The notes under the pieces were generated by a model, which was not told where the DNA came from, searched no databases, and saw only the letters and a list, made by a program, of their open reading frames with translations. From the NCBI RefSeq assembly GCF_000315625.1, contig NW_005434657.1, forward strand, positions 116,837 to 180,836: a stretch of DNA of 64,000 nt. The letters are read 5' to 3'. Of the stretch, positions 8,055-60,589 are shown one piece after another; positions within the stretch are counted from its first letter, which is position 1, and each line of letters starts with the position of its first letter. Source of the stretch: Guillardia theta CCMP2712 (lineage: Eukaryota > Protista > Cryptophyta). The position numbers and the translations under genes are program-made.

Positions 8055-8790
8055 CAGGATCAGGAGCAAGGAGCAGGAAAAGCGGGGCGAGCAGGAGCAG
8101 GATCAGGAGCCAGGAGCAGCAGGGATAGGCGTGCAGAGCGAGGAGGAAGGGGAGGAGGAGGAGGAGGAGGAGGAGGAGGAGGAGGAGGAGGAGGAGGAGG
8201 AGGATCGGGAGGAGCGGGAGGAGCGGGAGGAGCAGGAGGAGGAAGGAGGAGGAGGAGGAGGAGGAGGAGGAAGGGGATCGGGAGGAGCGGGAGGAGCAGG
8301 AGGAGGAATGAGGAGGATGAAGGAGGAGCAGGAGCACGGATCAGGAGCAAGGGAGCAGTTATGTGGATAAGTACGGAACAATGGAAAAATGATTCAGAGT
8401 ATCACCGCCTGCTCGCGATCATCCTGAAGACTCTAGTACAGTTCGAGGATGTCAACCAGAAGTTCATATGGATCCGCGTAGCAGACCTCCTGCTCTTCTG
8501 CTTNNNNNNNNNNNNNNNNNNNNNNNNNNNNNNNNNNNNNNNNNNNNNNNNNNNNNNNNNNNNNNNNNNNNNNNNNNNNNNNNNNNNNNNNNNNNNNNNN
8601 NNNGGAGCAGGAGCAGGAGCAAGGAGCAAGGAGCAAGGAGCAAGGAGCAAGGAGCAAGGAGCAAGAGGAGAAGGAGCAGGAGGATGAGCAGCAGGAGGAG
8701 GACGAGCGGGAGGAGGAGGAGGAGGAGGAGGAGGAGGAGGAGGAGGATGAGCAGCAAGGAGCGGGGGAGCAGCTCCTCCTGCTCCTTCTG
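8055..8790. repeat. (GGA)n / (GGAGCA)n / (GGAGCAA)n low-complexity tract spanning a 100-N gap
   Basis: Seen directly; gap at 8504-8603. Confidence 0.85.
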
Positions 8791-14523: not shown

Positions 14524-17500
14524 CTATTCCAAATCCTCCACTGTGATGTTAGCTGCATTCGGGTGTTGTGCCGTCGAGGCCGAGTTCCTCCTTGGGTGCT
14601 CCGGGTTCCAAACACGAACGAAGTCGTTGCCGATCTCGATGGCGGTAGCGGATCCAGAGCGCTTCCTGGCGATGTTGGGCTGTACTTCGCCGACTCCTGA
14701 CCTCGATCGGTCGCGACGAGCGAGAGAGAAGGCGAGAGCGAAGTCGCGTTCGTTGATGCTGTTCCGTCGCTGCCGGCTGACGTCGGAGTTGAAGTACTGG
14801 ACCACTGAGAGCCGGGGAGCGACCTTCTCCCGCCGTCGTCGAACACCGCTGTAGCTCAAGCAGTAGAAGACGATGACGGCGAGGAGTACGCCTCCTAGTG
14901 CGCAGGCTGCGATCATTGCCGTGTACGACAGAGGGACTCCCGAGCTAGTGCTGGCCGAGAAGGAGGTGATCTGAGGGTTTGTAGTCGCCGACGCCTCCGG
15001 TAAGCCATGTCGTCTGAACTGCTCGTTGAGGTTCTTGAGGTTCAGGTTCCCCGCCACTGCCCTCGCGTCCGTCTGAGTAGCAGTGACGATGCTGAAGCCG
15101 ACCTGAACGTTGCTCGAGCTACGTCTCGCTGCCTGTACCTTGTTGATAATCACCGTCGATGGGTCCACCGCTGCTGTCGCAGCCACGGAAGTTCGGAATT
15201 GGACGCGTTTGGCGTTGTCGAAGGACTGCAAGGCGATTGGAAGCGTGACCTGCATCTGGACTTGGATGTTAGGAGTCACGCCGGACGACGACGGGGAAAG
15301 CTGCGAGCTGGTCGAGTCCTGCAAGTCACTTCTAAGGGAGCGAAGCAGCGGGCAACTGGAGGGACCTGACTCTGATTCACGTAGTAGATCAATTTCTCCA
15401 CCAGATGCGTTCTGTTGATGTAGATGACCTGTGGCGAGGTTACATGGTTGAGATGATCGTCAGAATCGTACTCACTTTTGGTATCTCGACTGTTCGATTC
15501 AGGAAGGCCATCTGAGGCAAGACCGTGAAGTCAGACATGAACTGAAGAAGTCGAGATAACCTTTGGGAAGACCATTTTGTCAAGAGACACGTAGTAAGAA
15601 AGGTTGGAACAGAGCGTCTGAGAGCAAGAGTAAGATGATTCCTCCATTTGCAAGGAGACAAACCTTGTATGAAATGTCTGAAGTGTCAAAATCTGAGCAA
15701 TCAGCAAAGTTACAATCAATCGTTGCAGAAAAAAAAATATTGAACCTGGAAATGATTGAAAATATCTGCAAAGAGCATCGGCTATCCCGAACAAATTGAC
15801 AGCAAGAAACGAATTCAAATGGGGCTGAAAACAAGTGAGAAGCGAAACAAAATAAACAAATACAGCACCTTGCAGGTTACAAACAGTCGCCCATGATTGA
15901 AAATAATCTAAGAAAAGACAGCTTCAGTAAACAAGAAAAGAGCATTTTAGGATAAACCTCCGCCTGGCAGTCCTCCCCGTTGATATTGACCGTAACATTG
16001 GATTGGTTCTGAAAAAAGAAGATGAAAAACCAAGCACTCTGCCTGTCCTTCCTCCCTACCTGTGGAGCTTGGCACATGATCTCCTTGCACGTCACGTACT
16101 CCTTCCCGTCCATGTACCGTATCTGCCCCGGCCCCGTCAGCCCGCCCTCCGCCCCGCCTGTCTCCTCTCCTCCTCCCCTCCTNNNNNNNNNNNNNNNNNN
16201 NNNNNNNNNNNNNNNNNNNNNNNNNNNNNNNNNNNNNNNNNNNNNNNNNNNNNNNNNNNNNNNNNNNNNNNNNNNNNNNNNNTCCCGGCCTCTCCCCCCT
16301 TGGATCCTCCCCGTGTCCTTACCTCTCCCTGGCAGTCCTCCCCGTTGATATTGAGCGTGACGTTGGTCTGGTTCTGCGTACACGCCCCCCGTCGTCAGTG
16401 TCGCCTGCCCCCGCCTCCTCCCTGCCTCCCTACCTGTGGAGCTTGGCACATGATCTCCTTGCACGTCACGTACTCCTTCCCGTCCATGTACCGTATCTGC
16501 CCCGGCCCCGTCAGCCCGCCCTCCGCCCCGCCTGTCTCCTCTCCTCCTCCCCTCCTGCCTCCCCCTTCTCCCTCGCGCTCTCCCGGCCTCTCCCCCCTTG
16601 GATCCTCCCCGTGTCCTTACCTCCGCCTGGCAGTCCTCCCCGTTGATATTTACAGTAGTATTTGTTTGGTTCGCTGGCTGTTTTTATCTTTCAGATTCAT
16701 TGTACGAATTCTCAGGTTTACCTGAGTTTGCACATTGACGTTATACTGGTATGTTTGCTGAATTTGAATCTGTTTTTTAAGTCATCGTGTCTTTCAAAAT
16801 ATTTGCTTTTCTCTTTGCCTGGTTGTTGACAGTTGTCTGATTTTCGAGGTAAACAATCTTCTCTTGGTATAGAGGTATTTGATCGGAGCTATTTACATAT
16901 ACGAGGACTTGAACCTAAAAGTCTTTCAATGTTTGGTCAAGGTTGCAATCTCTTCGACACGTCACCTCCTTTGGTATCTCTACAATTTTCTCGATATAGA
17001 CAGGTTTCTCTATGTAGATCACTTTCTCTACCTGCAGACATTGAAGTCAATCATTGACATGTTTCCGACGTCTCAAACCGTTAAGATGCGACTGACAGGG
17101 TTTTGCGCCTGCACCTGTAATCGCTCTTTAGACGAGTTGGAAGCTCAGTGTTGTCCTACCGGAATCGCAATAAAGCATGTCCCGAACCCAGAGAGAGAGA
17201 AAGTCCCTTGAGGGCAGGGAGAACATGAACTTGAATGAGGAGTTGAGTAGGATCCATCCGGACAGACTGTACATGACGAGGAGCCTTGCACAGAGAACGT
17301 CCCAGCTTCGCAAGGGAGGCAGGACCCCATGTCGTGATAGTACCCGGCTGCACAAGTCCATTCACAGTTGCTGGAGACTGGCAAACTTTCTTGGAGATAG
17401 ACAGCGTTTGCAGGTTTGTTAGTGCAAACACTGCAGGCTTGCGGTCCACTGGAGGGTTTGAAAGAGCCAGCCGGGCATATCGTGCAATTCTTCGATCCAA

Positions 17501-46360: not shown

Positions 46361-48404
46361 TCAGATCGAGATACAAGCTCTGAACACAACTACGGAACTC
46401 ATGCAGAGATGACCGGGGGCAAGGAGAATTCCAGCTGCACAGTGAGTGGCCACTGTCTGCTTTCCTTCCCCTCGAGCTGACCTTGCACTNNNNNNNNNNN
46501 NNNNNNNNNNNNNNNNNNNNNNNNNNNNNNNNNNNNNNNNNNNNNNNNNNNNNNNNNNNNNNNNNNNNNNNNNNNNNNNNNNNNNNNNNNNNNNNNNNNN
46601 NNNNNNNNNNNNNNNNNNNNNNNNNNNNNNNNNNNNNNNNNNNNNNNNNNNNNNNNNNNNNNNNNNNNNNNNNNNNNNNNNNNNNNNNNNNNNNNNNNNN
46701 NNNNNNNNNNNNNNNNNNNNNNNNNNNNNNNNNNNNNNNNNNNNNNNNNNNNNNNNNNNNNNNNNNNNNNNNNNNNNNNNNNNNNNNNNNNNNNNNNNNN
46801 NNNNNNNNNNNNNNNNNNNNNNNNNNNNNNNNNNNNNNNNNNNNNNNNNNNNNNNNNNNNNNNNNNNNNNNNNNNNNNNNNNNNNNNNNNNNNNNNNNNN
46901 NNNNNNNNNNNNNNNNNNNNNNNNNNNNNNNNNNNNNNNNNNNNNNNNNNNNNNNNNNNNNNNNNNNNNNNNNNNNNNNNNNNNNNNNNNNNNNNNNNNN
47001 NNNNNNNNNNNNNNNNNNNNNNNNNNNNNNNNNNNNNNNNNNNNNNNNNNNNNNNNNNNNNNNNNNNNNNNNNNNNNNNNNNNNNNNNNNNNNNNNNNNN
47101 NNNNNNNNNNNNNNNNNNNNNNNNNNNNNNNNNNNNNNNNNNNNNNNNNNNNNNNNNNNNNNNNNNNNNNNNNNNNNNNNNNNNNNNNNNNNNNNNNNNN
47201 NNNNNNNNNNNNNNNNNNNNNNNNNNNNNNNNNNNNNNNNNNNNNNNNNNNNNNNNNNNNNNNNNNNNNNNNNNNNNNNNNNNNNNNNNNNNNNNNNNNN
47301 NNNNNNNNNNNNNNNNNNNNNNNNNNNNNNNNNNNNNNNNNNNNNNNNNNNNNNNNNNNNNNNNNNNNNNNNNNNNNNNNNNNNNNNNNNNNNNNNNNNN
47401 NNNNNNNAAAAGAGAAAATGTCGAAGCCGGTGTGCATTGATATGGAGAGGAAAGGACGGGAGGTGGGAGTGGGGCAGGCTGAAGGAGGAGGAGGAGGAGG
47501 AGGAGGAGGAGGAGGAGGAGGAGGCTCCACCTGTTGACTTCCAGGCCGGAGTTCATGTCCCAGAAGCGGACGGATGCGTCCTTGCTGCCGGAGATGACGA
47601 GGTTTCCCTGGGAGCTGTAGGCCAGGCAGGTGACGCTGCCCTCGTGCCCGCGGAAGGAGCGGACGGGCTGGGTCCTGTCAACTGTCCACAAGCGAACCTG
47701 CGTGAGAAGGATGAGGATCAAGATGAGAAGGTGAGCAATGAGATGAACGGGTGGGGGTGGGGGAGGTGGAGGTGGAGGAGGAGGAGTGTGCTAGAACGAG
47801 GCGGAGGAAGGGCGAGAGGAGTGATTGGAATAGAGGAAATTGCAAGGAGTGAGAGGAGGGATGGAGGAGGGCGAGACTGACATAGTGGTCGTATCCGCCC
47901 GAAACAACGATTCTCGGCTCCTCCGGATGGCAGGCGACAGCGTAGACGTCTCCCTTGTGCGAGACGAGGGTCTCGGAGGGATCGCAATCATAACTGCAAG
48001 CAGATGAGAGGACAGCGACACAGGAAAGGGGAGGAAGAGGAGGGAGAGGAGGGAGGGGAGGGAGAGGAAGGAGAGGAAAGGGAAGAGGATGAGGAGACAG
48101 GAGGGCACAAGAGGAAGGGAAAGGAGGGAGAGGTGGGGGCAGGAGGAGAGGAAAGGGAGGGGGGGGGGGGGGTCGAGTGCGCTCTTGACCTTCTCCCTTG
48201 ATGCCATGTCCTCATCTCCGAAGGTCGTCGGGTTGTTGAAGAGTTCCCAGCACTGAGCAGCTCAAGTTTCTGCTCGACATTCCAGACCTTGACCGTCGAG
48301 TCGCCTGCGATTCGTCGCCGTCAGACGCTCGCACAAGAGCAAAGTGAATGAGTCAAGCATGTTGTGAAGACATGTGACGAGGGTGGTGGTGGTGATGATG
48401 ATGA

Positions 48405-50607: not shown

Positions 50608-50871
50608 NNNNNNNNNNNNNNNNNNNNNNNNNNNNNNNNNNNNNNNNNNNNNNNNNNNNNNNNNNNNNNNNNNNNNNNNNNNNNNNNNNNNNNNNNNNNN
50701 NNNNNNNTCCCGGCAGTGAGTGCGACCGCCGGCCGGGCCGGCCGCTGGCGGGTCGAGGGCCCGGACCACTCCAAAGGCCGGGATGGTATGGACTCAATGA
50801 CTAAGTTTACTGCATCAGATGACTCGCCGAAGTTCGATGACTGATCAGTCTGCTAGCGTCTTCCGCGTCTC

Positions 50872-52650: not shown

Positions 52651-52821
52651 GGCAGGATTGCCCAGAGGATCGCCGGTCAGCAGGTCCTGAAAAAAACGAC
52701 CAGGAGATTTTTGTGNNNNNNNNNNNNNNNNNNNNNNNNNNNNNNNNNNNNNNNNNNNNNNNNNNNNNNNNNNNNNNNNNNNNNNNNNNNNNNNNNNNNN
52801 NNNNNNNNNNNNNNNGGGAAT

Positions 52822-54313: not shown

Positions 54314-54417
54314 TCAAGGCCTAAGCTTCTTCTGTCCCTTCTTGATGTCCTGAAGATGTTGCTTGATCCTCTCGATATCCCGGTGATGGGCAGCCTCATT
54401 CTGACAAGAGCATGCGT

Positions 54418-54450
<33 letters not shown>

Positions 54451-55470
54451 GAGGAGGCGATGCAGACGTGGAGACGAAAAGGAAGAGAAAAATGGAGGGA
54501 ACGAGCGAGGAGGGCGGGGAGGAGGGGCGAGGGGATGGACGAAAGGAGGGGACAGGGGGCAAGAGGAGGGAGGGAAACGTGAGACGCTTTACCCGCAAGA
54601 GCATCTTCCTGACTTCGCAGAATCTTTCTCTGATCTCGACTGTCTTCCTCGATTGCTCCTGCACCTCCTCATGCTGTCTCTGACATCTCTGAAGGGCCTC
54701 TTGGTAGAAGAACATGTCGTGCTGGATCTGCTTCTTCATGTTCTCCCGCTGCAGCGGCTTCTCCCTCATGGTCTCCTCGAGCTCCACCAGCTTCTTCGTC
54801 AGATACCTCGTATTGTCCACCTCCTTCCTGAACTCCTCCTTGATCACCTCAAGCACCGCCGTCTCCTCCTCCAGCCACTTCTCCAGCTGCCGTAGCTCCA
54901 CCGCCCGGCGGCTCAGCAACGCGGACCGCAGCTTCACCGCCCGCTGCATCTCGGGAGGGCAGAGCTGGAGGTCCTCGTGCGCCACTCCCCTCTGCAGATC
55001 GCTCAGCCCGATTGGGTTGTACACCGTGTGGAGGATGCCGTCCTCGTCCCTCTGTACGCTGACGCTCCCATGGATGTCGTCGGTGTTCACCTTGACCTTC
55101 TCGTGCTTCCCGTCCAGGAACAGGGTGATGGTGCCCGGCGGCTTCTTGTCAACTCTGCGGGTGATGGTCTCGTCGTTGAGAGTCTGCATGTACGCGGAGT
55201 CCAGCTGGTCCAAGATTGATACCTTCTCGTGGAGGGCCAGCGATCGGTCGATCTTTGACTGGAACTTGTCAAACATCCTGTCGCTGTCGGTCTGCAGCAT
55301 TTTGCTCATCTCAACGGGTACAACGCCTGGTATGTAACCGATGGTGAGAGGGATGCCTGTCGAAGACACCAGCCTGGCATCTGCTGCCTCCCCACCTGCC
55401 CCCCTTGCTCGCTGTTGTCGGGCCATGGCCCGTCGATGCATCAGTTCCTGCGTATCTGCCAGATCTTGGA

Positions 55471-55504
<34 letters not shown>

Positions 55505-56446
55505 TGTTGGGAGAGTACTTTCATCCGTGAACGTGCTTGTGTAAGTGACAACAGATGTAGAGGAGCTGCGGTTCAACGAACTCTCAGACCTTGACATGTC
55601 ACCCCAGCTGCTGGGCGAGGAGAGGGCGAGCTCTTGCGGAGGGCGAGTACGACGTTGAGATTCCATGGAAGAAGAGTCGAACGAGCTGTCCACGTCTTCC
55701 AGACTCTGAGTCGCATGCGATGCCCTCGAAACTATCCCCGTCTCTGCCTCGGTACCGGACTCATCCCAGGAGGACAACCCCGAGTCAGAGTCTGCTGGCC
55801 GGTAAGAAGGTTTCCTCTCTTGTCTTCTCCCTTGCGCTACCGTTGTTGTGAGAGGGAGCCTACCTCGAGCATCGTCGCCATCGACCTGGTAGTCATCCTC
55901 CATCCTTGCTTGCGCGTCCAGGGCCAGTTTGAAAGATTTCGCCATCTCCATCACGCTCCTGCGAGTTTCTTCCAGTTGCAGCATGGAAGCATCTGGAACT
56001 TCCTCGGTCACGGTCTCTGCCCTTGACAGAGAATCCTCCATTTTCTTTGTCGTCCAGACTAGCCACTCGAGGTCCGTCCTGTATCCGACATCGAGGGCTA
56101 TCATCCGCTTCTTGCGGGGGGAGGGGGTGACCATGGTAGAAGTTCCCTCCCCAGAGCCTGAGACTTCCTCCATCATCCCTCGACCGTGCCACTCAGCCCA
56201 ACAGGCGTACTCTCTTGCGTCTTCTCCAACCCACATAGCGATTTCCTCCAGCCCTCTCAACCTCCAGCCCTCAGCTCTCGGAGCAACCTGCCTCTCCTCT
56301 AACGCACGTTCTCCGCTCCTCCTCGCCGTGTCTATCCTTCGCTCTACGTCTCTCCTCCTCCTCTCTGCCTCCTCCCTCCTCCTCCTCGTCGCCTTCAGCT
56401 GCATCTCAACCTTCGCCATCTCCACCCCGAAGTCGGACATTGTCAA
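54314..56446 (-). CDS. Coiled-coil/Ser-Thr-rich hypothetical protein (an in-frame intron is likely at ~54403-54592)
   Basis: 710-aa ORF with N- and C-terminal coiled coils; the low-complexity stretch near the 3' end has GT...AG ends. Confidence 0.7.
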
Positions 56447-57426
56447 ACTTGACTAGATGAGCGGACCTCATCCCCGCTGCGGGCTGCCTGGCCCAGCTGC
56501 TGGCCCAGACGGTGCTGGGCCCAGTGCCTGGCCGCCGGGCCCACGGGGCAGTGCCTGGCCGGGCAGCGCAGAGGCCTGGCGCGTGACCGTCCGACCTGAC
56601 CGGGCCTGACTCCCGCCACAGCCTGACCAGCTGGTGACGACCTGGCCTGGGGATTTCGCAACCCCGAGTCAAGTTGCGCAAAGAGAACGCAGTGGCCGGG
56701 TCTCCAGCACGACCAGCCGCGCCGCTCGTCTGTCCTTTGTTCTCTCGGCTGGATGGTACCCGAGTCCGTCACGCGGACGAGCCGGATCTGGTCCTTCCTC
56801 CCCTACCAGCTTCCTTCCTGCGGTTGCATCAGGCCCGGGTTGATCGTGGAGCATATTGACCTCGACGAGCTGATAGCGCACGTCCGAGCAGCGAGATCGC
56901 ATCGCCTGCTCTCTTTCAGCTCGCGGGGGGGCCACCCTGTATCCCCCCCAAGCCTTCAGTCACAGGGCGGTTGATGCAGAGTTTCCTCTGAGCAGGGCGC
57001 AGTTATCCCCAGCTCAGCCTTGAAGCTCTTCCCGGGCTCACGGCAGCTATGCAGTGGATCTCTACCCACCCGAGTCAGCGAGTCAGCCTTGGAGTCAGTT
57101 CCCCCTGCAGCCCCTGCTTCGGAAGACTCAGAGCCCCCAGCGGCGCCTGCACTGCCTCATGACCCAGAGGAAGAGCAGAGGCGAGGCTGGTGATGCGATC
57201 GCATTTTACTATCAAGTTATGGGTTTCAGTGATGGCCTGTACTACTCAGAACATATGAATCATAGGTGAATTTGGATTGTATATCAGTTTTGTGAGTAAA
57301 ATTATCCACATCCCCCCTTGTACGTGAGCATGACGGCTCAGCCTCAACGCACGCTATGAGTGGTCTACTTCCTTCACATCTTCAGCCATCTGAGCAGTTC
57401 CTGGCATCTTCATTCGCCACCCATCA

Positions 57427-59637
57427 CTAACCAACGAACCCTCGATTGAAATCAATACTCGCCGCCTGGACCATCGACCGCTCCTCCCCTTTCTTCCACA
57501 TGTACTGCTCTAGCGCTCCTTCATCCTTGACAGAGGCTATTCGGAACAACATTCCATCCTCCGGCGGGACGACAAAAACGATCCTTATCGTCCATATCTC
57601 ACCTGCAGGAATCCCCAGAGCCTTAAGAGCAGTCAAGAAATACGAGAGCTTGAGAGAGTGATCCTTCGCAACCGTCAGCTGAAAAAACTGCACGACCTTG
57701 TCATCCTGATCTACAATGATTGCATCCCAGCCACCTTGAAATTCACAGATAGGCTTGAGACACACCCTCGTGTGGGGAAGAGAGTCCGTGTCTTGTGACG
57801 GATCGAAGATTACAACGAGATTGCATGCTTTCAAAACTTCAGGCTCGCTTGATCCACGGTAAGTTATGCTCAGGTCTCTTCTCACTTTCTCGAAAAAGAG
57901 CATCTCCAAAAGATACCTATGCATGGCTCGCGGGCCTCTAAAGGCAGTCAACATTCTTCTCAGTATGTCAACCGCACCCACGGACGCCGCAAGATTGCTG
58001 GCTACGTACTTGCTCACAGGAAACCTGACCACCTTCTCCTGAGTGACCATAGTAGCAATCAGCCTGTTCGTCATATCCCCCGAGGAAGCGCCTACATGGC
58101 CCCGAAAAAGATCTTGTAAGTTTGGAGCACTTTGAAGCGCAAGATCCAAGGACCGAAGCACCTCCGCCGCAGTCATGTCGAACATGTACCGACATGACCC
58201 ACCTGCGAGGTAGTGCTTATGTCTCACTCGCTCTTCTTTCGATCTCGGCCGTGTAGTCATCTTGAAACCCAAAGCCTCTCCTGTCACATTCATCTCCAAT
58301 GTGGGAGCCACCTTGCTGTAAAACTCGTCAAACTGCACTGCCTCTAGATATTCATCGATCCTCCATGATGCAACTATGTGCTCCTTCAGCCCCATCTCTC
58401 GATCCTCTTCATCGTAGGCCTTTCCTCGAGAAGCCATTGACGTCACTACCACAAGACGTCGATTCTGCCTGTCAGCATCCCGCCATCTTATACAAGCTAC
58501 CAAAGCTCTCGTGTGAGATTCTTGGTGTGTCAAGTAGCCATCGAGCACCAGGAGGCTCTTTTTGCCGTCTGACAACCCTTCAAGCAACAGTGTCATCTGT
58601 TCCCCCTCAGACTCCTTTGCGAATGAGCATGTTCTTCTCTTGTTGCCTGTCACCTCCACGACACAAGTGTTGCTTCTGGCCTTCAGCCTGATGCATTTGA
58701 AGCTCCACTCATTCCTATCCAGCGTCATACAAAACGAAAGCGTTGTTGTTGTCTTCCCTGTTCCTGGAGAGCCTTGTATCCATCCAAGAGCACCATGCTC
58801 TAGCACTTGCTCTCGCAGGAAACAGAACTGCTCCACGAAGGCTTTTCGGCAGTAGAGAAGAAGATGCTCTCCGCTGTTTACATTTGTGCCCCATAAGTAA
58901 GAGCAATCTAGACGGAAGTATTTCTCCTCCTTGCAAAACCCCATACCGTCAAGCCGAGCTTCTGACTCTGTCCAGGTAAAGGCTGCCTGCTTCTTTTCCT
59001 TCATTTCCTCTCGAAGCTTTGCCTCTTTATCTCGAAGCTTTGCCTCTTTATCTCGAAGCTGTGCCTCTTTATCTCGAAGCTGTCTCTCTCTAACTCGAAG
59101 ATGTCTCTCTCTAACTCCAAGCTGTTTCTTGTCACCTCGAAGCCGTTTCTCTCTGGCCGCAAGCTGTTGCTTTTCACCTTCAAGCTGTTGCTTTTCACCT
59201 TCAAGCTTCGTTTGCTTCATGATCAAGACAGGCTTCATATTGGGGTCTTCTGCCTGGCTGATCTCTTGCTCTACATCAGCCATGGTTTGGTCTACTCCAT
59301 TGATCTTTTTCACTACTCCCTTGATCTCGTCCTCGACTCCATTGATCTTTTCCACTACTCCCTTGATCTCGTCCTCGACTCCATTGATCTTTTCCACTAC
59401 TCCCTTGATCTCGTCCACTACTCCCTTGATCTCGTCCTCTACTCCCTTGATCTCGTCCACTACTCCCTTGATCTCGTCCTCTACTCCATTGATCTTTTCC
59501 ACTACTCCCTTGATCTCTTGCTCTGCAGCAGTGATGGCTTGGTCTGTTTTTTTGACTTTTGTTTGTACCCCCCTAGCCTCTTGCTCTACAGCTGAACTCG
59601 TCTCCTCCTCCTCCAGCTCTCGAACTCTTTTGGCCAT
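57427..59637 (-). CDS. Crinkler/RHS (CR)-type protein: coiled-coil header + P-loop ATPase + PD-(D/E)xK-like nuclease; intronless
   Basis: Walker A GSPGTGKT, Walker B LLVLDG, RLVVVTSM, AGGSCRYMF; C-terminal LLEMLF...CLKPICEFQGGWDAII...VQFFQLTVAKDHSLK, as in oomycete CRN C-termini. Confidence 0.85.
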   Translation of the reverse strand: MAKRVRELEEEETSSAVEQEARGVQTKVKKTDQAITAAEQEIKGVVEKINGVEDEIKGVVDEIKGVEDEIKGVVDEIKGVVEKINGVEDEIKGVVEKINGVEDEIKGVVKKINGVDQTMADVEQEISQAEDPNMKPVLIMKQTKLEGEKQQLEGEKQQLAAREKRLRGDKKQLGVRERHLRVRERQLRDKEAQLRDKEAKLRDKEAKLREEMKEKKQAAFTWTESEARLDGMGFCKEEKYFRLDCSYLWGTNVNSGEHLLLYCRKAFVEQFCFLREQVLEHGALGWIQGSPGTGKTTTTLSFCMTLDRNEWSFKCIRLKARSNTCVVEVTGNKRRTCSFAKESEGEQMTLLLEGLSDGKKSLLVLDGYLTHQESHTRALVACIRWRDADRQNRRLVVVTSMASRGKAYDEEDREMGLKEHIVASWRIDEYLEAVQFDEFYSKVAPTLEMNVTGEALGFKMTTRPRSKEERVRHKHYLAGGSCRYMFDMTAAEVLRSLDLALQSAPNLQDLFRGHVGASSGDMTNRLIATMVTQEKVVRFPVSKYVASNLAASVGAVDILRRMLTAFRGPRAMHRYLLEMLFFEKVRRDLSITYRGSSEPEVLKACNLVVIFDPSQDTDSLPHTRVCLKPICEFQGGWDAIIVDQDDKVVQFFQLTVAKDHSLKLSYFLTALKALGIPAGEIWTIRIVFVVPPEDGMLFRIASVKDEGALEQYMWKKGEERSMVQAASIDFNRGFVG
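59000..59520 (-). repeat. Coding 21/42-nt tandem repeats encoding heptads (EIKGVV[D/E], KINGVED; LRDKEAK; LEGEKQQ)
   Basis: CTCCCTTGATCTCGTCC / CTCCATTGATCTTTTCC units at 59294-59518; TCTCGAAGCTTTGCCTCTTTA units at 59007-59100. Confidence 0.92.
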
Positions 59638-60589
59638 GGTAGCGGCAGTGGCAGCGGTGTGTATCGCAAGATAAATTGTGGAGAATTTTATGTAGAGCTA
59701 TGGGATCTAGGTAGGATTCACCCGATTCACAATGTACTACACATTTGTTTTCTGTCAGGTTTATAGTTCAAACTTGATACCTAAAACGAATCCGCCTCAG
59801 CCAATCAACCGGAGAAAGGATAAGGCAGCGCAATCCACTACTGGTAGGCTCAGTTCACAAAGAGCAGTAGGGCGGGCGGCGGCGGCCCGGCTCTATAACC
59901 GTCGTGAAGTCATTGTTTGTAACGGCCAACCGTGTTGCCAAAACTTAACGGTCGGAGCCAGACAGCCCGGGACCGGCCCGGCGGCCCGCGAGTCCTTCAA
60001 CGGCCATTCAGTTCGCCGGCCGCGCCGACGCGAGACTCTTGACTGAAGAGAAACTTAACTTTGAGTAAAGACTTGACTCGAGCCGCCTGGCACTGCCAGA
60101 GCCAGTGGCGTCACCGGGCCGGGGTGCAGACGGTGCGACTTCAGCGGCTCGATCATCATCCCCTTCGGCCCGACTCGAGGCCCGGTATGCCATGATCATA
60201 CGTCGCTCCAAACCGGCGTCGTGAGCCAGGCGTACTAACGCGGCCGCGTATTCAGCCCCTCTTCTCAGGCGCCGGGCCGGGCAGCCCGCCTGTCCGCCGG
60301 CCCGGGGCCACCCGGCCCAGAGAGTCTGATCCGATCTAGCCTCTCGTACTGCTTGCCAAGTTGACCGAGTCACGTGAGTGACGACAGTTTTAAATTTTGA
60401 GCAAAGCGACTCAGCCTGTGACAACTTGCGCCGGCAGTCACGAGTGCCAGGCGGCTGTGGGTCGGAGGGGTAGATTCAAAGGAGTACGTCGTCGAGCCCG
60501 GTGTATCCTGTCGGGACATAGTGAACTGAGCGGGGCTGGGTGGGGTGGGGGTTCTAAAGGAAAGTCCCTACACCTCCTTTTTCGAGCCA

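What the first reader, a model, noticed from the sequence alone, without database searches (positions are those of the whole stretch)
57427..59637. Intronless Crinkler-type ATPase-nuclease gene in an apparently free-living alga
Seen: a 736-aa single-exon ORF among heavily spliced neighbours, with intact Walker A/B, GGxxR and a C-terminal P..(F)QGGWDA...FFQLTVA..H motif. Known: this ATPase + REase-fold architecture defines Crinkler/RHS effectors, which are linked to transposon-derived conflict systems and normally carry an LFLAK ubiquitin-like or other header. Here there is no signal peptide or LFLAK. Inference: an intracellular nuclease-ATPase module, either an anti-viral/anti-parasite defence resembling prokaryotic NTPase-nuclease systems or a selfish mobile gene.
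Basis: partly seen in the sequence, partly recalled or inferred. Interest (0 to 1): 0.8.

Follow-up and report, generated by a model that had tools for sequence, protein, structure and literature searches.

The report
Crinkler-type NTPase-nuclease gene family in Guillardia
This is a real, transcribed, intron-free gene of the free-living alga Guillardia theta, one of about ninety copies of the ATPase-plus-nuclease-fold module that plant-pathogen "Crinkler" effectors carry; here it has a coiled-coil front end instead of the usual delivery domain, so it is a new member of a known family.

Summary
Window 57427-59637 (-) is an uninterrupted 736-aa ORF with Walker A (GSPGTGKT), a Walker B Asp followed by Gly (not Glu), the AGGSCR motif and the C-terminal QGGWD...FFQLT..H motif.

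The genome is Guillardia theta CCMP2712. A family profile finds 2357 cluster representatives. Of 61 strong full-length hits, 12 carry the Pfam Crinkler header (PF20147), including Phytophthora, Pythium and Thraustotheca CRNs. The AlphaFold model superposes on fungal Crinkler/RHS clusters (TM 0.77 over 476 residues). The C-terminal domain alone matches mostly restriction-endonuclease folds, at modest Z (up to 6.2).

The gene is one of at least 88 matches in the genome, about 44 of them intact. They lie in gene-sized duplicons and tandem arrays, are very young (dS 0.003-0.07), and are under moderate purifying selection (dN/dS 0.3-0.55). Most form one cryptophyte clade with Hanusia. Probable RNA contigs cover only the ORF and show no splice joints.

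This copy has no leader and no LFLAK header. It starts with a basic KRVR motif followed by heptad repeats.

Function is untested. I favour an NTP-gated DNA-targeting protein acting inside the alga, in a semi-selfish, RHS-like gene family. Crinkler-type proteins in free-living eukaryotes have been known since 2016. The scan had already noted this family elsewhere in this genome (38 notes, one followed up).

The parts
57427..59637 (-). Complete single-exon ORF, 736 aa plus stop
   Evidence: ORF list; translation. One search shows no splice joints in the contigs.
58951..59637 (-). Header, aa 1-229: basic start MAKRVRE (KRVR, NLS-like by inspection), then coiled coil
   Evidence: Only coiled-coil and SMC-type weak hits. 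Length and repeat order differ between the 90-95% paralogues. dN/dS is above 1, but the repeats align unreliably.
59292..59517 (-). Heptad array 1: 10.8 copies of a 21-nt unit (E-D/E-E-I-K-G-V type)
   Evidence: Tandem Repeats Finder
59009..59207 (-). Heptad array 2: 21-nt units (K-E-A-K/Q-L-R-D type), about 5.6 plus 4.4 copies
   Evidence: Tandem Repeats Finder
58228..58950 (-). P-loop NTPase domain (AAA+/STAND-like), aa 230-470
   Evidence: Weak Pfam AAA_11/AAA_16/AAA_19 hits and nSTAND3/nSTAND5 hits in relatives. Structure: 2qen Z 12.3, Avs5 11.6, MuB 11.3, TnsC 10-11, plus Foldseek hits to RFC, Apaf-1 and CED-4.
58750..58773 (-). Walker A, G289-SPGTGK295-T296
   Evidence: K is invariant in the family.
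58537..58554 (-). Walker B, LLVLD366-G367 (Asp invariant; next residue is Gly, not Glu/Asp)
   Evidence: D 61/61; G 54/61
57943..58227 (-). Helical / winged-helix linker, aa 471-565, including the invariant K474 and AGGSCR483 motif (58180-58218)
   Evidence: Secondary structure of the model is helices plus a beta-hairpin. K245, G250 and R254 of the query are invariant. The archaeal ATPase+wHTH chains 2qen and 2fna align over model residues 6-322.
57430..57942 (-). REase-fold domain, aa 566-736, with conserved E578 (helix), D638 (GGWD, start of strand), Q653-x-T655 (next strand) and H660. The core motif lies at 57649-57738.
   Evidence: Domain model pLDDT 91. VIA-align list dominated by restriction-endonuclease folds, Z 5-6.2. 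Foldseek against PDB not significant. Conservation counts.
56733..59774 (-). Gene-sized duplicon (about 3 kb): the ORF plus about 137 bp upstream and about 690 bp downstream. It is 90-92% identical to three plus-strand copies 42-60 kb away on the same contig; homology to the first of these extends to 59943.
   Evidence: blastn; alignment of the ends; no terminal inverted repeats.
59761..59774 (-). 5' edge of the duplicon: half-palindrome AGTT-TG-AACTAT, 137 nt upstream of the ATG. The central two bases are TG or CA in different copies. It occurs only in this closest subfamily.
56733..57150 (.). 3' flank: a dispersed non-coding repeat (at least 30 copies at 70-98% identity on many contigs, some next to other family members, many not)
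   Evidence: Own-genome DNA search; no convincing ORF.
57328..59672 (-). Approximate extent of the transcript as seen in contigs of probable RNA runs
   Evidence: tables 2 and 8: X1 and X4 have depth only within this span. Strand and exact ends are not shown by contigs, and the raw RNA run gave only 21 reads.

Best explanation
The ORF is a functional member of a cryptophyte-specific expansion of the Crinkler-RHS (CR) type module: P-loop NTPase, winged-helix linker and REase-fold domain. The usual ubiquitin-like LxLFLAK header is replaced by a fast-changing coiled coil built from 21-nt heptad repeats. Shown here: homology to header-bearing oomycete Crinklers, the three-domain fold, transcription as one exon, high copy number, young gene-sized duplicates, and purifying selection on the module. 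Inferred: the coiled coil oligomerises the protein. The NTPase has a Walker B of D-G and so lacks the catalytic Glu; it probably acts as a nucleotide-binding switch rather than a motor, gating DNA binding or cutting by the wHTH and REase-like domains. This copy has no secretion signal or Ubl header and begins with a basic KRVR motif, so it probably acts on DNA inside the alga's own cell, most likely in the nucleus. The family as a whole behaves like trypanosome RHS genes: a semi-selfish, TE-associated, rapidly duplicating conflict gene family rather than a housekeeping gene or a classical secreted effector. My confidence in the family and architecture assignment is about 0.9. The figure below is for the whole statement, including the intracellular, semi-selfish reading.
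For: Family assignment: a profile of 21 members finds 2357 representatives at E<=1e-3. Of 61 hits at E<=1e-66, 12 carry Pfam PF20147 Crinkler (best 7e-25), and the named ones are Phytophthora oleae, P. cinnamomi, Pythium and Thraustotheca CRNs. The whole-module model (pLDDT 83.6) aligns to Crinkler clusters at TM 0.77 over 476 aa and TM 0.73, and to a kinetoplastid RHS cluster at TM 0.64. The language-model feature search agrees (0.99). REase fold. Conserved K295, D366, K474, R483, E578, D638, Q653 and H660. Expansion: 88 matches, about 48 near full length and about 44 without stops. Sixteen of 18 sampled copies plus Hanusia form one clade with support 99. Young duplicates and selection: dS 0.003-0.07 and module dN/dS 0.3-0.55. 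Gene-sized duplicons occur on different contigs. TE context: a dispersed repeat at the 3' flank, and a Crypton-like ORF beside the sister copies in the array. Transcription without joints. No leader or LFLAK.
Against: No biochemical or localisation data exist. The REase motif lacks the canonical Lys (QxT instead of ExK), structural Z scores are only 5-6.2, and Foldseek was not significant, so the domain might bind rather than cut. The NLS reading rests on four residues seen by eye. Other paralogues carry hydrophobic signal-like leaders, so part of the family may be exported or sent to organelles. No transposon ends (TIR/TSD) bound the duplicon, and this copy has no recombinase beside it, so 'selfish' is circumstantial. 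dN/dS below 1 shows that the host, or the element, keeps the protein working, but not for what.
Confidence: 0.5

Rival explanations
1. An innate-immunity protein: a STAND/AAA+-like NTPase that senses a virus or invading DNA and unleashes the C-terminal nuclease, analogous to prokaryotic Avs/AVAST or McrBC-type NTPase-nuclease defences.
For: The best solved-structure matches of the NTPase include Avs5 SIR2-STAND (Foldseek rank 1; Z 11.6) and AVAST5 (Z 11.3). Relatives give weak Pfam nSTAND3/nSTAND5 hits. The REase hits include McrC, Card1 and Can2. Large, fast-turning gene families with variable N-termini are typical of immune genes.
Against: There is no C-terminal sensor array (TPR, LRR or WD40); the protein ends with the nuclease-fold domain. 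No PADLOC model matches beyond the coiled coil. The same Z range is reached by RFC, ORC, MuB, TnsC and many other AAA+ proteins. No induction data exist.
Confidence: 0.2
2. A delivered toxin or effector used against other organisms (grazers, competitors, bacteria), as proposed for header-bearing Crinklers, with the coiled coil serving as an alternative delivery header.
For: There is direct homology to oomycete CRN effector modules. The review of Zhang et al. 2016 (PMC5289972) states that CR proteins occur with various alpha-helical headers and in free-living eukaryotes, and are read as inter-organismal toxins. Several Guillardia paralogues start with signal-peptide-like leaders.
Against: This copy and its closest relatives have no hydrophobic leader and no Ubl header. 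Guillardia is a free-living phototroph with no known delivery apparatus (general knowledge). Nothing here shows export.
Confidence: 0.15
3. A component of a mobile element: the NTPase-REase pair is the working machinery or passenger of a transposon (compare TnsC/TnsA or MuB, or a Crypton passenger), and the copies are transposition products.
For: Gene-sized duplicons that carry their own promoter region lie scattered over many contigs, some pairs with dS near 0. MuB and TnsC are among the structural matches (Z 10-11). A Crypton-like tyrosine-recombinase ORF sits about 520 bp upstream of the sister copies and near some other copies. A dispersed repeat abuts the 3' end. The review relays the view that CR modules derive from prokaryotic transposon genes.
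Against: There are no terminal inverted repeats or recognisable target duplications at the ends of this unit. Duplicon boundaries differ between subfamilies. This copy has no recombinase nearby. The tandem array is equally explained by unequal crossing-over (an earlier follow-up, s1-436999, reached the same view).
Confidence: 0.1
4. A non-catalytic derivative: the REase-like domain has lost nuclease activity (QxT replaces ExK) and the protein is an NTP-dependent DNA- or chromatin-binding factor.
For: The canonical Lys is missing family-wide: T in 44 of 61, A or S in most others. The Walker B lacks the catalytic Glu. Z scores to true nucleases are modest.
Against: E578, D638 and Q653 sit at the canonical metal-ligand positions and are kept in at least 90% of 61 diverse relatives, along with H660 (50 of 61). 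That pattern is expected of a live active site; a Lys or His moved to a neighbouring element is known in the REase superfamily (general knowledge).
Confidence: 0.05

Closest known systems
Oomycete Crinkler (CRN) effectors with the NTPase + HTH + REase C-terminus (CR proteins of Zhang et al. 2016, as summarised in PMC5289972)
   Same: Homologous module over its full length: HMMER E 1e-73 to 1e-90 for Phytophthora, Pythium and Thraustotheca proteins, at 25-30% identity. Same conserved K, D, K..R, E, D, Q and H positions and the same three-domain fold.
   Different: No ubiquitin-like LxLFLAK/HVLVxxP header; a coiled coil of heptad repeats takes its place. The host is a free-living photosynthetic cryptophyte. 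The copies form their own clade.
Kinetoplastid retrotransposon hot spot (RHS) proteins, Pfam PF07999/PF20445
   Same: Similar overall fold (TM 0.64 by query; feature score 0.94). Also a large, multi-copy, partly pseudogenised family embedded in repeat- and TE-rich DNA.
   Different: No Pfam RHSP hit even at E<=1. The relationship is visible only through structure and features. The N-terminal regions differ.
Chytrid and aphelid CR-type proteins (Gorgonomyces haynaldii, Chytriomyces hyalinus, Amoeboaphelidium occidentale)
   Same: Among the closest non-cryptophyte relatives (E 1e-126 to 1e-157). Some also start with a short coiled coil instead of a Ubl header and are multi-copy (7 members in one 90% cluster).
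   Different: Separate clades in the tree. The sister group of the cryptophyte clade is unresolved.
Prokaryotic NTPase-nuclease systems (McrBC, Avs/AVAST STAND proteins, TnsC/TnsA, MuB)
   Same: An AAA+/STAND-like NTPase coupled to a PD-(D/E)xK-fold domain. These are structural matches at Z 10-12 (NTPase) and 5-6 (REase).
   Different: No detectable sequence homology. Domain order and partners differ, and there is no sensor domain.

Membership tests
CR (Crinkler-RHS-type) NTPase-HTH-REase module | Sequence homology of the module to proteins that carry a bona fide Crinkler header | tested here: met
   Of 61 hits at E<=1e-66, 12 have Pfam PF20147 (best 7e-25). The named ones are oomycete CRNs.
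CR (Crinkler-RHS-type) NTPase-HTH-REase module | P-loop NTPase with Walker A and Walker B | tested here: met
   GSPGTGK295T and LLVLD366 are invariant. The fold is AAA+/STAND-like. The residue after the Walker B Asp is Gly.
CR (Crinkler-RHS-type) NTPase-HTH-REase module | Helical/HTH linker between the NTPase and the nuclease | tested here: inconclusive
   The model shows helices plus a beta-hairpin at aa 467-565. The archaeal ATPase+wHTH chains 2qen and 2fna align through this region. No separate domain search was run.
CR (Crinkler-RHS-type) NTPase-HTH-REase module | C-terminal restriction-endonuclease (PD-(D/E)xK) fold | tested here: met
   Domain model pLDDT 91. Most of the 50 listed VIA-align matches are REase-fold nucleases, top Z 6.2. 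Foldseek was not significant.
PD-(D/E)xK nucleases (catalytically active) | Catalytic D ... (D/E)xK triad | tested here: not met
   E578 and D638 are present, but the third motif is Q653-L-T655; the Lys is absent family-wide. Activity cannot be judged with these tools.
Crinkler effectors in the strict (oomycete) sense | N-terminal ubiquitin-like header with LxLFLAK (Pfam PF20147) | tested here: not met
   No PF20147 hit in the window protein or in 15 cryptophyte and liverwort relatives. The N-terminus is coiled coil.
Kinetoplastid RHS proteins (Pfam PF07999 RHSP) | Match to the RHSP profile | tested here: not met
   No hit at E<=1. The similarity is structural only.
STAND/NLR-type immune NTPases | Sensor repeat domain (TPR/LRR/WD40) C-terminal to the NTPase | tested here: not met
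   The protein ends in the REase-fold domain, and no repeat domain appears in the model or in Pfam.

The most novel reading that the evidence does not exclude
In Guillardia, an organism with four genomes, the CR family may have turned its headers into address labels. Some copies start with an NLS-like basic motif (this one: KRVR). Others start with a signal-peptide or bipartite-presequence-like leader that ends in a ubiquitin-tail-like L-R-x-R-G-G site before the coiled coil. The same NTP-gated nuclease-fold module would then be sent to different DNA-containing compartments (nucleus, periplastid space with the nucleomorph, plastid) or exported and released by a ubiquitin-type protease. That would be a compartment-addressed genome-conflict system.
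Probability: 0.08. Interest if true: 0.8.

Novelty: new member of a known kind. Interest (0 to 1): 0.38.

Why it matters
It places a large, young, transcribed expansion of the Crinkler/RHS NTPase-nuclease-fold module in a well-studied, culturable, free-living cryptophyte alga whose genome is sequenced. This supports the view that these 'effector' modules are general eukaryotic conflict or selfish genes rather than pathogen tools. Guillardia offers a system to test what the module does, since no member of the NTPase-REase class has a solved structure. The unusual conserved E..D..QxT..H site and the D-G Walker B are shared with oomycete CRNs. Biochemistry on the algal protein would therefore inform crop-pathogen effector biology without working on a pathogen.

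Tried and rejected
- Pfam, NCBIfam and PADLOC scans of the protein gave only generic P-loop and coiled-coil hits.
- Sequence searches of the PDB, with the single protein and with the profile, found only weak RFC/ORC Walker A matches.
- Foldseek of the C-terminal domain against the PDB was not significant.
- Pfam scans of paralogue and liverwort N-termini found no header domain.
- No terminal inverted repeats lie at the duplicon ends.
- The palindrome at the 5' edge occurs only in the closest subfamily, so it is not a family-wide signal.
- The Crypton-like ORF has no Pfam hit. Its identification rests on a feature search and a motif seen by eye.
- The bacterial promoter/terminator scan is irrelevant for a eukaryote and I ignored it.
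- The raw RNA run gave only 21 reads, so strand and transcript ends are undetermined.
- The key paper, Zhang et al. 2016 (PMC4857004), is not held. I relied on the review PMC5289972. No held paper mentions both Guillardia and Crinkler, but I cannot exclude that Zhang et al. list Guillardia.
The header classes therefore rest on 28 ORFs.
- I ran no complex prediction.
Full report
OBSERVATION. One search lists an ATG-to-stop ORF of 736 aa at 57427..59637 on the minus strand, exactly as reported. The translation shows these motifs:
- Walker A, G289-SPGTGKT.
- Walker B, LLVLD366 followed by Gly.
- K474-HYLAGGSCR483.
- At the C-terminus, P629-ICEFQGGWD638, FFQ653-L-T655-VAKDH660.

The first 229 residues are coiled coil. 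They are built from two arrays of 21-nt (heptad) repeats, at 59292-59517 (10.8 copies) and 59009-59207. The protein starts MAKRVRELEEE, with no hydrophobic leader and no LxLFLAK motif. GC content across the gene (0.47-0.51) is lower than in most of the flanking DNA.

ORGANISM AND COPY NUMBER. Named database hits identify the genome as Guillardia theta CCMP2712, a free-living marine cryptophyte. A six-frame search of the 87-Mb assembly with aa 230-736 gave 88 matches. About 48 cover nearly the whole module, about 44 of these have no stop, and the rest are fragments. Identities range from 28% to 95%. Tandem clusters lie on contigs C17, C84, C193, C19, C13 and C28. In the 28 loci I examined, every copy is a single long ORF of 580-1070 aa.

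FAMILY ASSIGNMENT. Curated libraries give only weak generic P-loop and coiled-coil hits. A profile of 21 module sequences (A4) searched by HMMER against 1.84 billion representatives found 2357 proteins at E<=1e-3 and 588 at E<=1e-30. Of 61 strong hits with N-terminal extensions, 12 carry the Pfam Crinkler header PF20147 (best E 7e-25), and several show textbook LFLAK or LYLAK/R motifs. Named relatives are:
- Crinkler proteins of Phytophthora oleae, P. cinnamomi, Pythium insidiosum and Thraustotheca clavata.
- Proteins of the chytrids Gorgonomyces and Chytriomyces, and of the aphelid Amoeboaphelidium.
- Proteins of the liverwort Calypogeia fissa.
- Proteins of the cryptophyte Hanusia phi.

The ESM-Atlas feature search and shape search point independently to the same family:
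- TM 0.77 over 476 residues to a basidiomycete 'Crinkler' cluster.
- TM 0.73 to a CRN/RHSP cluster.
- TM 0.64 to kinetoplastid RHS.
- TM 0.59 to chytrid Crinklers.

STRUCTURE. The AlphaFold2 model of aa 230-736 has pLDDT 83.6 and pTM 0.78.
- The N-terminal two thirds match AAA+/STAND NTPases that carry a helical or winged-helix appendage. Matches include the archaeal ATPases 2qen (Z 12.3) and 2fna, Avs5, AVAST5, MuB, TnsC, ORC/Cdc6, RFC, Apaf-1, CED-4 and mS29.
- The C-terminal 181 residues, folded alone, give pLDDT 91. Their VIA-align list is made up almost entirely of PD-(D/E)xK folds: R.BspD6I (Z 6.2), N.BspD6I, McrC (6.1), FokI (5.5), Card1, SdaI, LlaBIII, HsdR, SgrAI, Can1/Can2, Hna, Hjc and VRR-NUC.
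- These Z scores are modest and Foldseek was not significant. The fold call therefore rests on the consistency of the list, not on any single score.

Mapping conservation onto the secondary structure gives the following:
- E578 lies in the first helix.
- D638 lies at the start of a strand.
- Q653-x-T655 lie in the next strand.
- H660 lies in the following hairpin.

E578, D638 and Q653 occupy the canonical E, D and (D/E) positions, but Thr replaces the Lys. Across 61 diverse relatives, oomycete CRNs included, E is kept in 59, D in 59, Q in 55, T in 44 and H in 50. This looks like a maintained, non-canonical site, and I cannot say whether it cuts. Likewise the Walker B is D-G in 54 of 61, which suggests a nucleotide switch rather than a fast hydrolase (inference).

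EXPRESSION AND GENE STRUCTURE. Contigs from two studies that are probably RNA (X1, X4) cover 57328-59672 at depth of about 100. They show nothing in either flank, while a DNA run (X12) covers the whole 5 kb. No joints were reported. This supports a single-exon transcript with short UTRs. Two caveats apply: some of those contigs differ at a few positions and may come from paralogues, and the one raw RNA run yielded only 21 reads, so strand and transcript ends are not established. Family members also occur in Guillardia and Hanusia transcriptome-derived protein sets.

GENOMIC BEHAVIOUR.
- The window copy lies in a duplicon of about 3 kb (56733-59774). It is 90-92% identical to three plus-strand copies 42-60 kb away on the same contig.
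- Those three copies sit in a 7.25-kb tandem unit. The rest of that unit holds a 516-aa ORF with a tyrosine-recombinase-like H-x-x-R...Y motif, seen by eye. Its features match NDC10_II/GCR1_C (Crypton-type) clusters, and it is itself a family of at least 99 matches in this genome.
- The window copy has no such neighbour.
- The duplicon's 5' edge is a half-palindrome 137 nt upstream of the ATG. Its 3' part (56733-57150) is a dispersed non-coding repeat with at least 30 copies. No terminal inverted repeats bound the unit.
- Other subfamilies also duplicate as gene-sized units of 2.7-4.1 kb onto different contigs.
- Pairwise Nei-Gojobori estimates give dS of 0.003-0.07 for the youngest pairs and a module dN/dS of 0.3-0.55, lowest in the REase part. 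The header gives values above 1, but its repeats align poorly.
- A maximum-likelihood tree of 89 modules puts 16 of 18 sampled Guillardia copies together with Hanusia in one clade (support 99). Two copies form a second, deeper clade. The sister group is unresolved among the oomycete, chytrid/aphelid and environmental clades (quick search, LG+G4, midpoint root for drawing only).

INTERPRETATION. The family and architecture assignment is firm (about 0.9). For function, I favour an NTP-gated DNA-targeting protein that acts inside the producing cell. The reasons are:
- It has no export signal.
- It starts with a basic KRVR motif.
- Characterised CRNs act in nuclei and on DNA, according to the review PMC5289972.

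The family turns over like trypanosome RHS genes. The rivals are a STAND-like immune protein, a delivered toxin, transposon machinery, and a non-catalytic DNA-binding derivative. All remain open, and the report sections list what would separate them.

COMPARISON WITH WHAT IS KNOWN. The review PMC5289972 relays several points from Zhang et al. 2016:
- NTPase+HTH+REase is their commonest C-terminal architecture.
- Alpha-helical headers exist besides the Ubl header.
- The modules are thought to derive from prokaryotic transposon-linked genes.

The present gene fits all of this, so it is a new member of a known kind. No held paper links Guillardia with Crinklers, but the primary paper was not available to check.

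EARLIER SCAN NOTES. The scan had already flagged this family many times in this genome: 38 notes mention Crinkler. One followed-up report covers the tandem array 37.7 kb beyond this window and describes Crypton pieces between the copies. My independent analysis agrees with it.

Noticed in passing
L025:1290-4097:+, L026:2518-5724:-, L009:1510-3687:-, L008:844-3033:+, L029:1677-3989:+, L016:1054-2985:+; proteins P0005, P0007-P0011, P0017: Other paralogues begin with a hydrophobic, signal-peptide-like leader. This is followed 30-60 residues later by a ubiquitin-tail-like motif (L-[RT]-[LI]-[RK]-G-G, e.g. LRIRGG, LTLRGG, LRLKGG) just before the coiled coil. A second class, including the window copy, begins M-x-K-R-(R/V)-R. 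This suggests alternative targeting or processing of the same module. No Pfam domain is found in these leaders.
   Followed up: partly
L037:3857-5407:+ (contig C17:223856-225403), repeated in each 7.25-kb unit of the array beyond the window: A 516-aa ORF about 520 bp upstream of each sister Crinkler-type copy, with a tyrosine-recombinase-like H-S-I-R-K-G..T-Y...Y-L-R-Y motif. It has no Pfam hit. Its ESM features match NDC10_II/GCR1_C (Crypton-type) clusters. It gives at least 99 matches in the genome, some of them near other family members (contigs C2, C147, C502).
   Followed up: partly
window 56733-57150: A GC-rich non-coding dispersed repeat directly downstream of the gene. It has at least 30 copies at 70-98% identity on many contigs, both beside family members and alone. 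Its nature is unknown.
   Followed up: partly
window 59761-59774 and the equivalent sites at C17 ~218.56k, 225.81k and 233.41k: The 5' boundary of the duplicon is a 12-14-nt palindrome, (AT)AGTT-NN-AACTAT. The central dinucleotide is TG in two copies and CA in the other two, i.e. the site read in the opposite orientation. It lies about 100 nt upstream of where the transcript contigs begin.
   Followed up: partly
window 54314-56446 (-): A neighbouring 710-aa open frame, rich in charged coiled-coil segments and Ser/Thr runs, with no Pfam hit. It is not part of the duplicon.
   Followed up: no
P0020, P0021, P0027 (Calypogeia fissa): The liverwort assembly holds several close relatives (32-33% identity to the window module). 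Their short N-terminal region looks beta-rich by eye but gives no Pfam Crinkler hit. I did not check whether they belong to the plant or to an associated fungus.
   Followed up: no
window 46490-47407, 50608-50707, 52716-52815, 8504-8603, 16183-16282: Runs of N (assembly gaps) inside the window.
   Followed up: no
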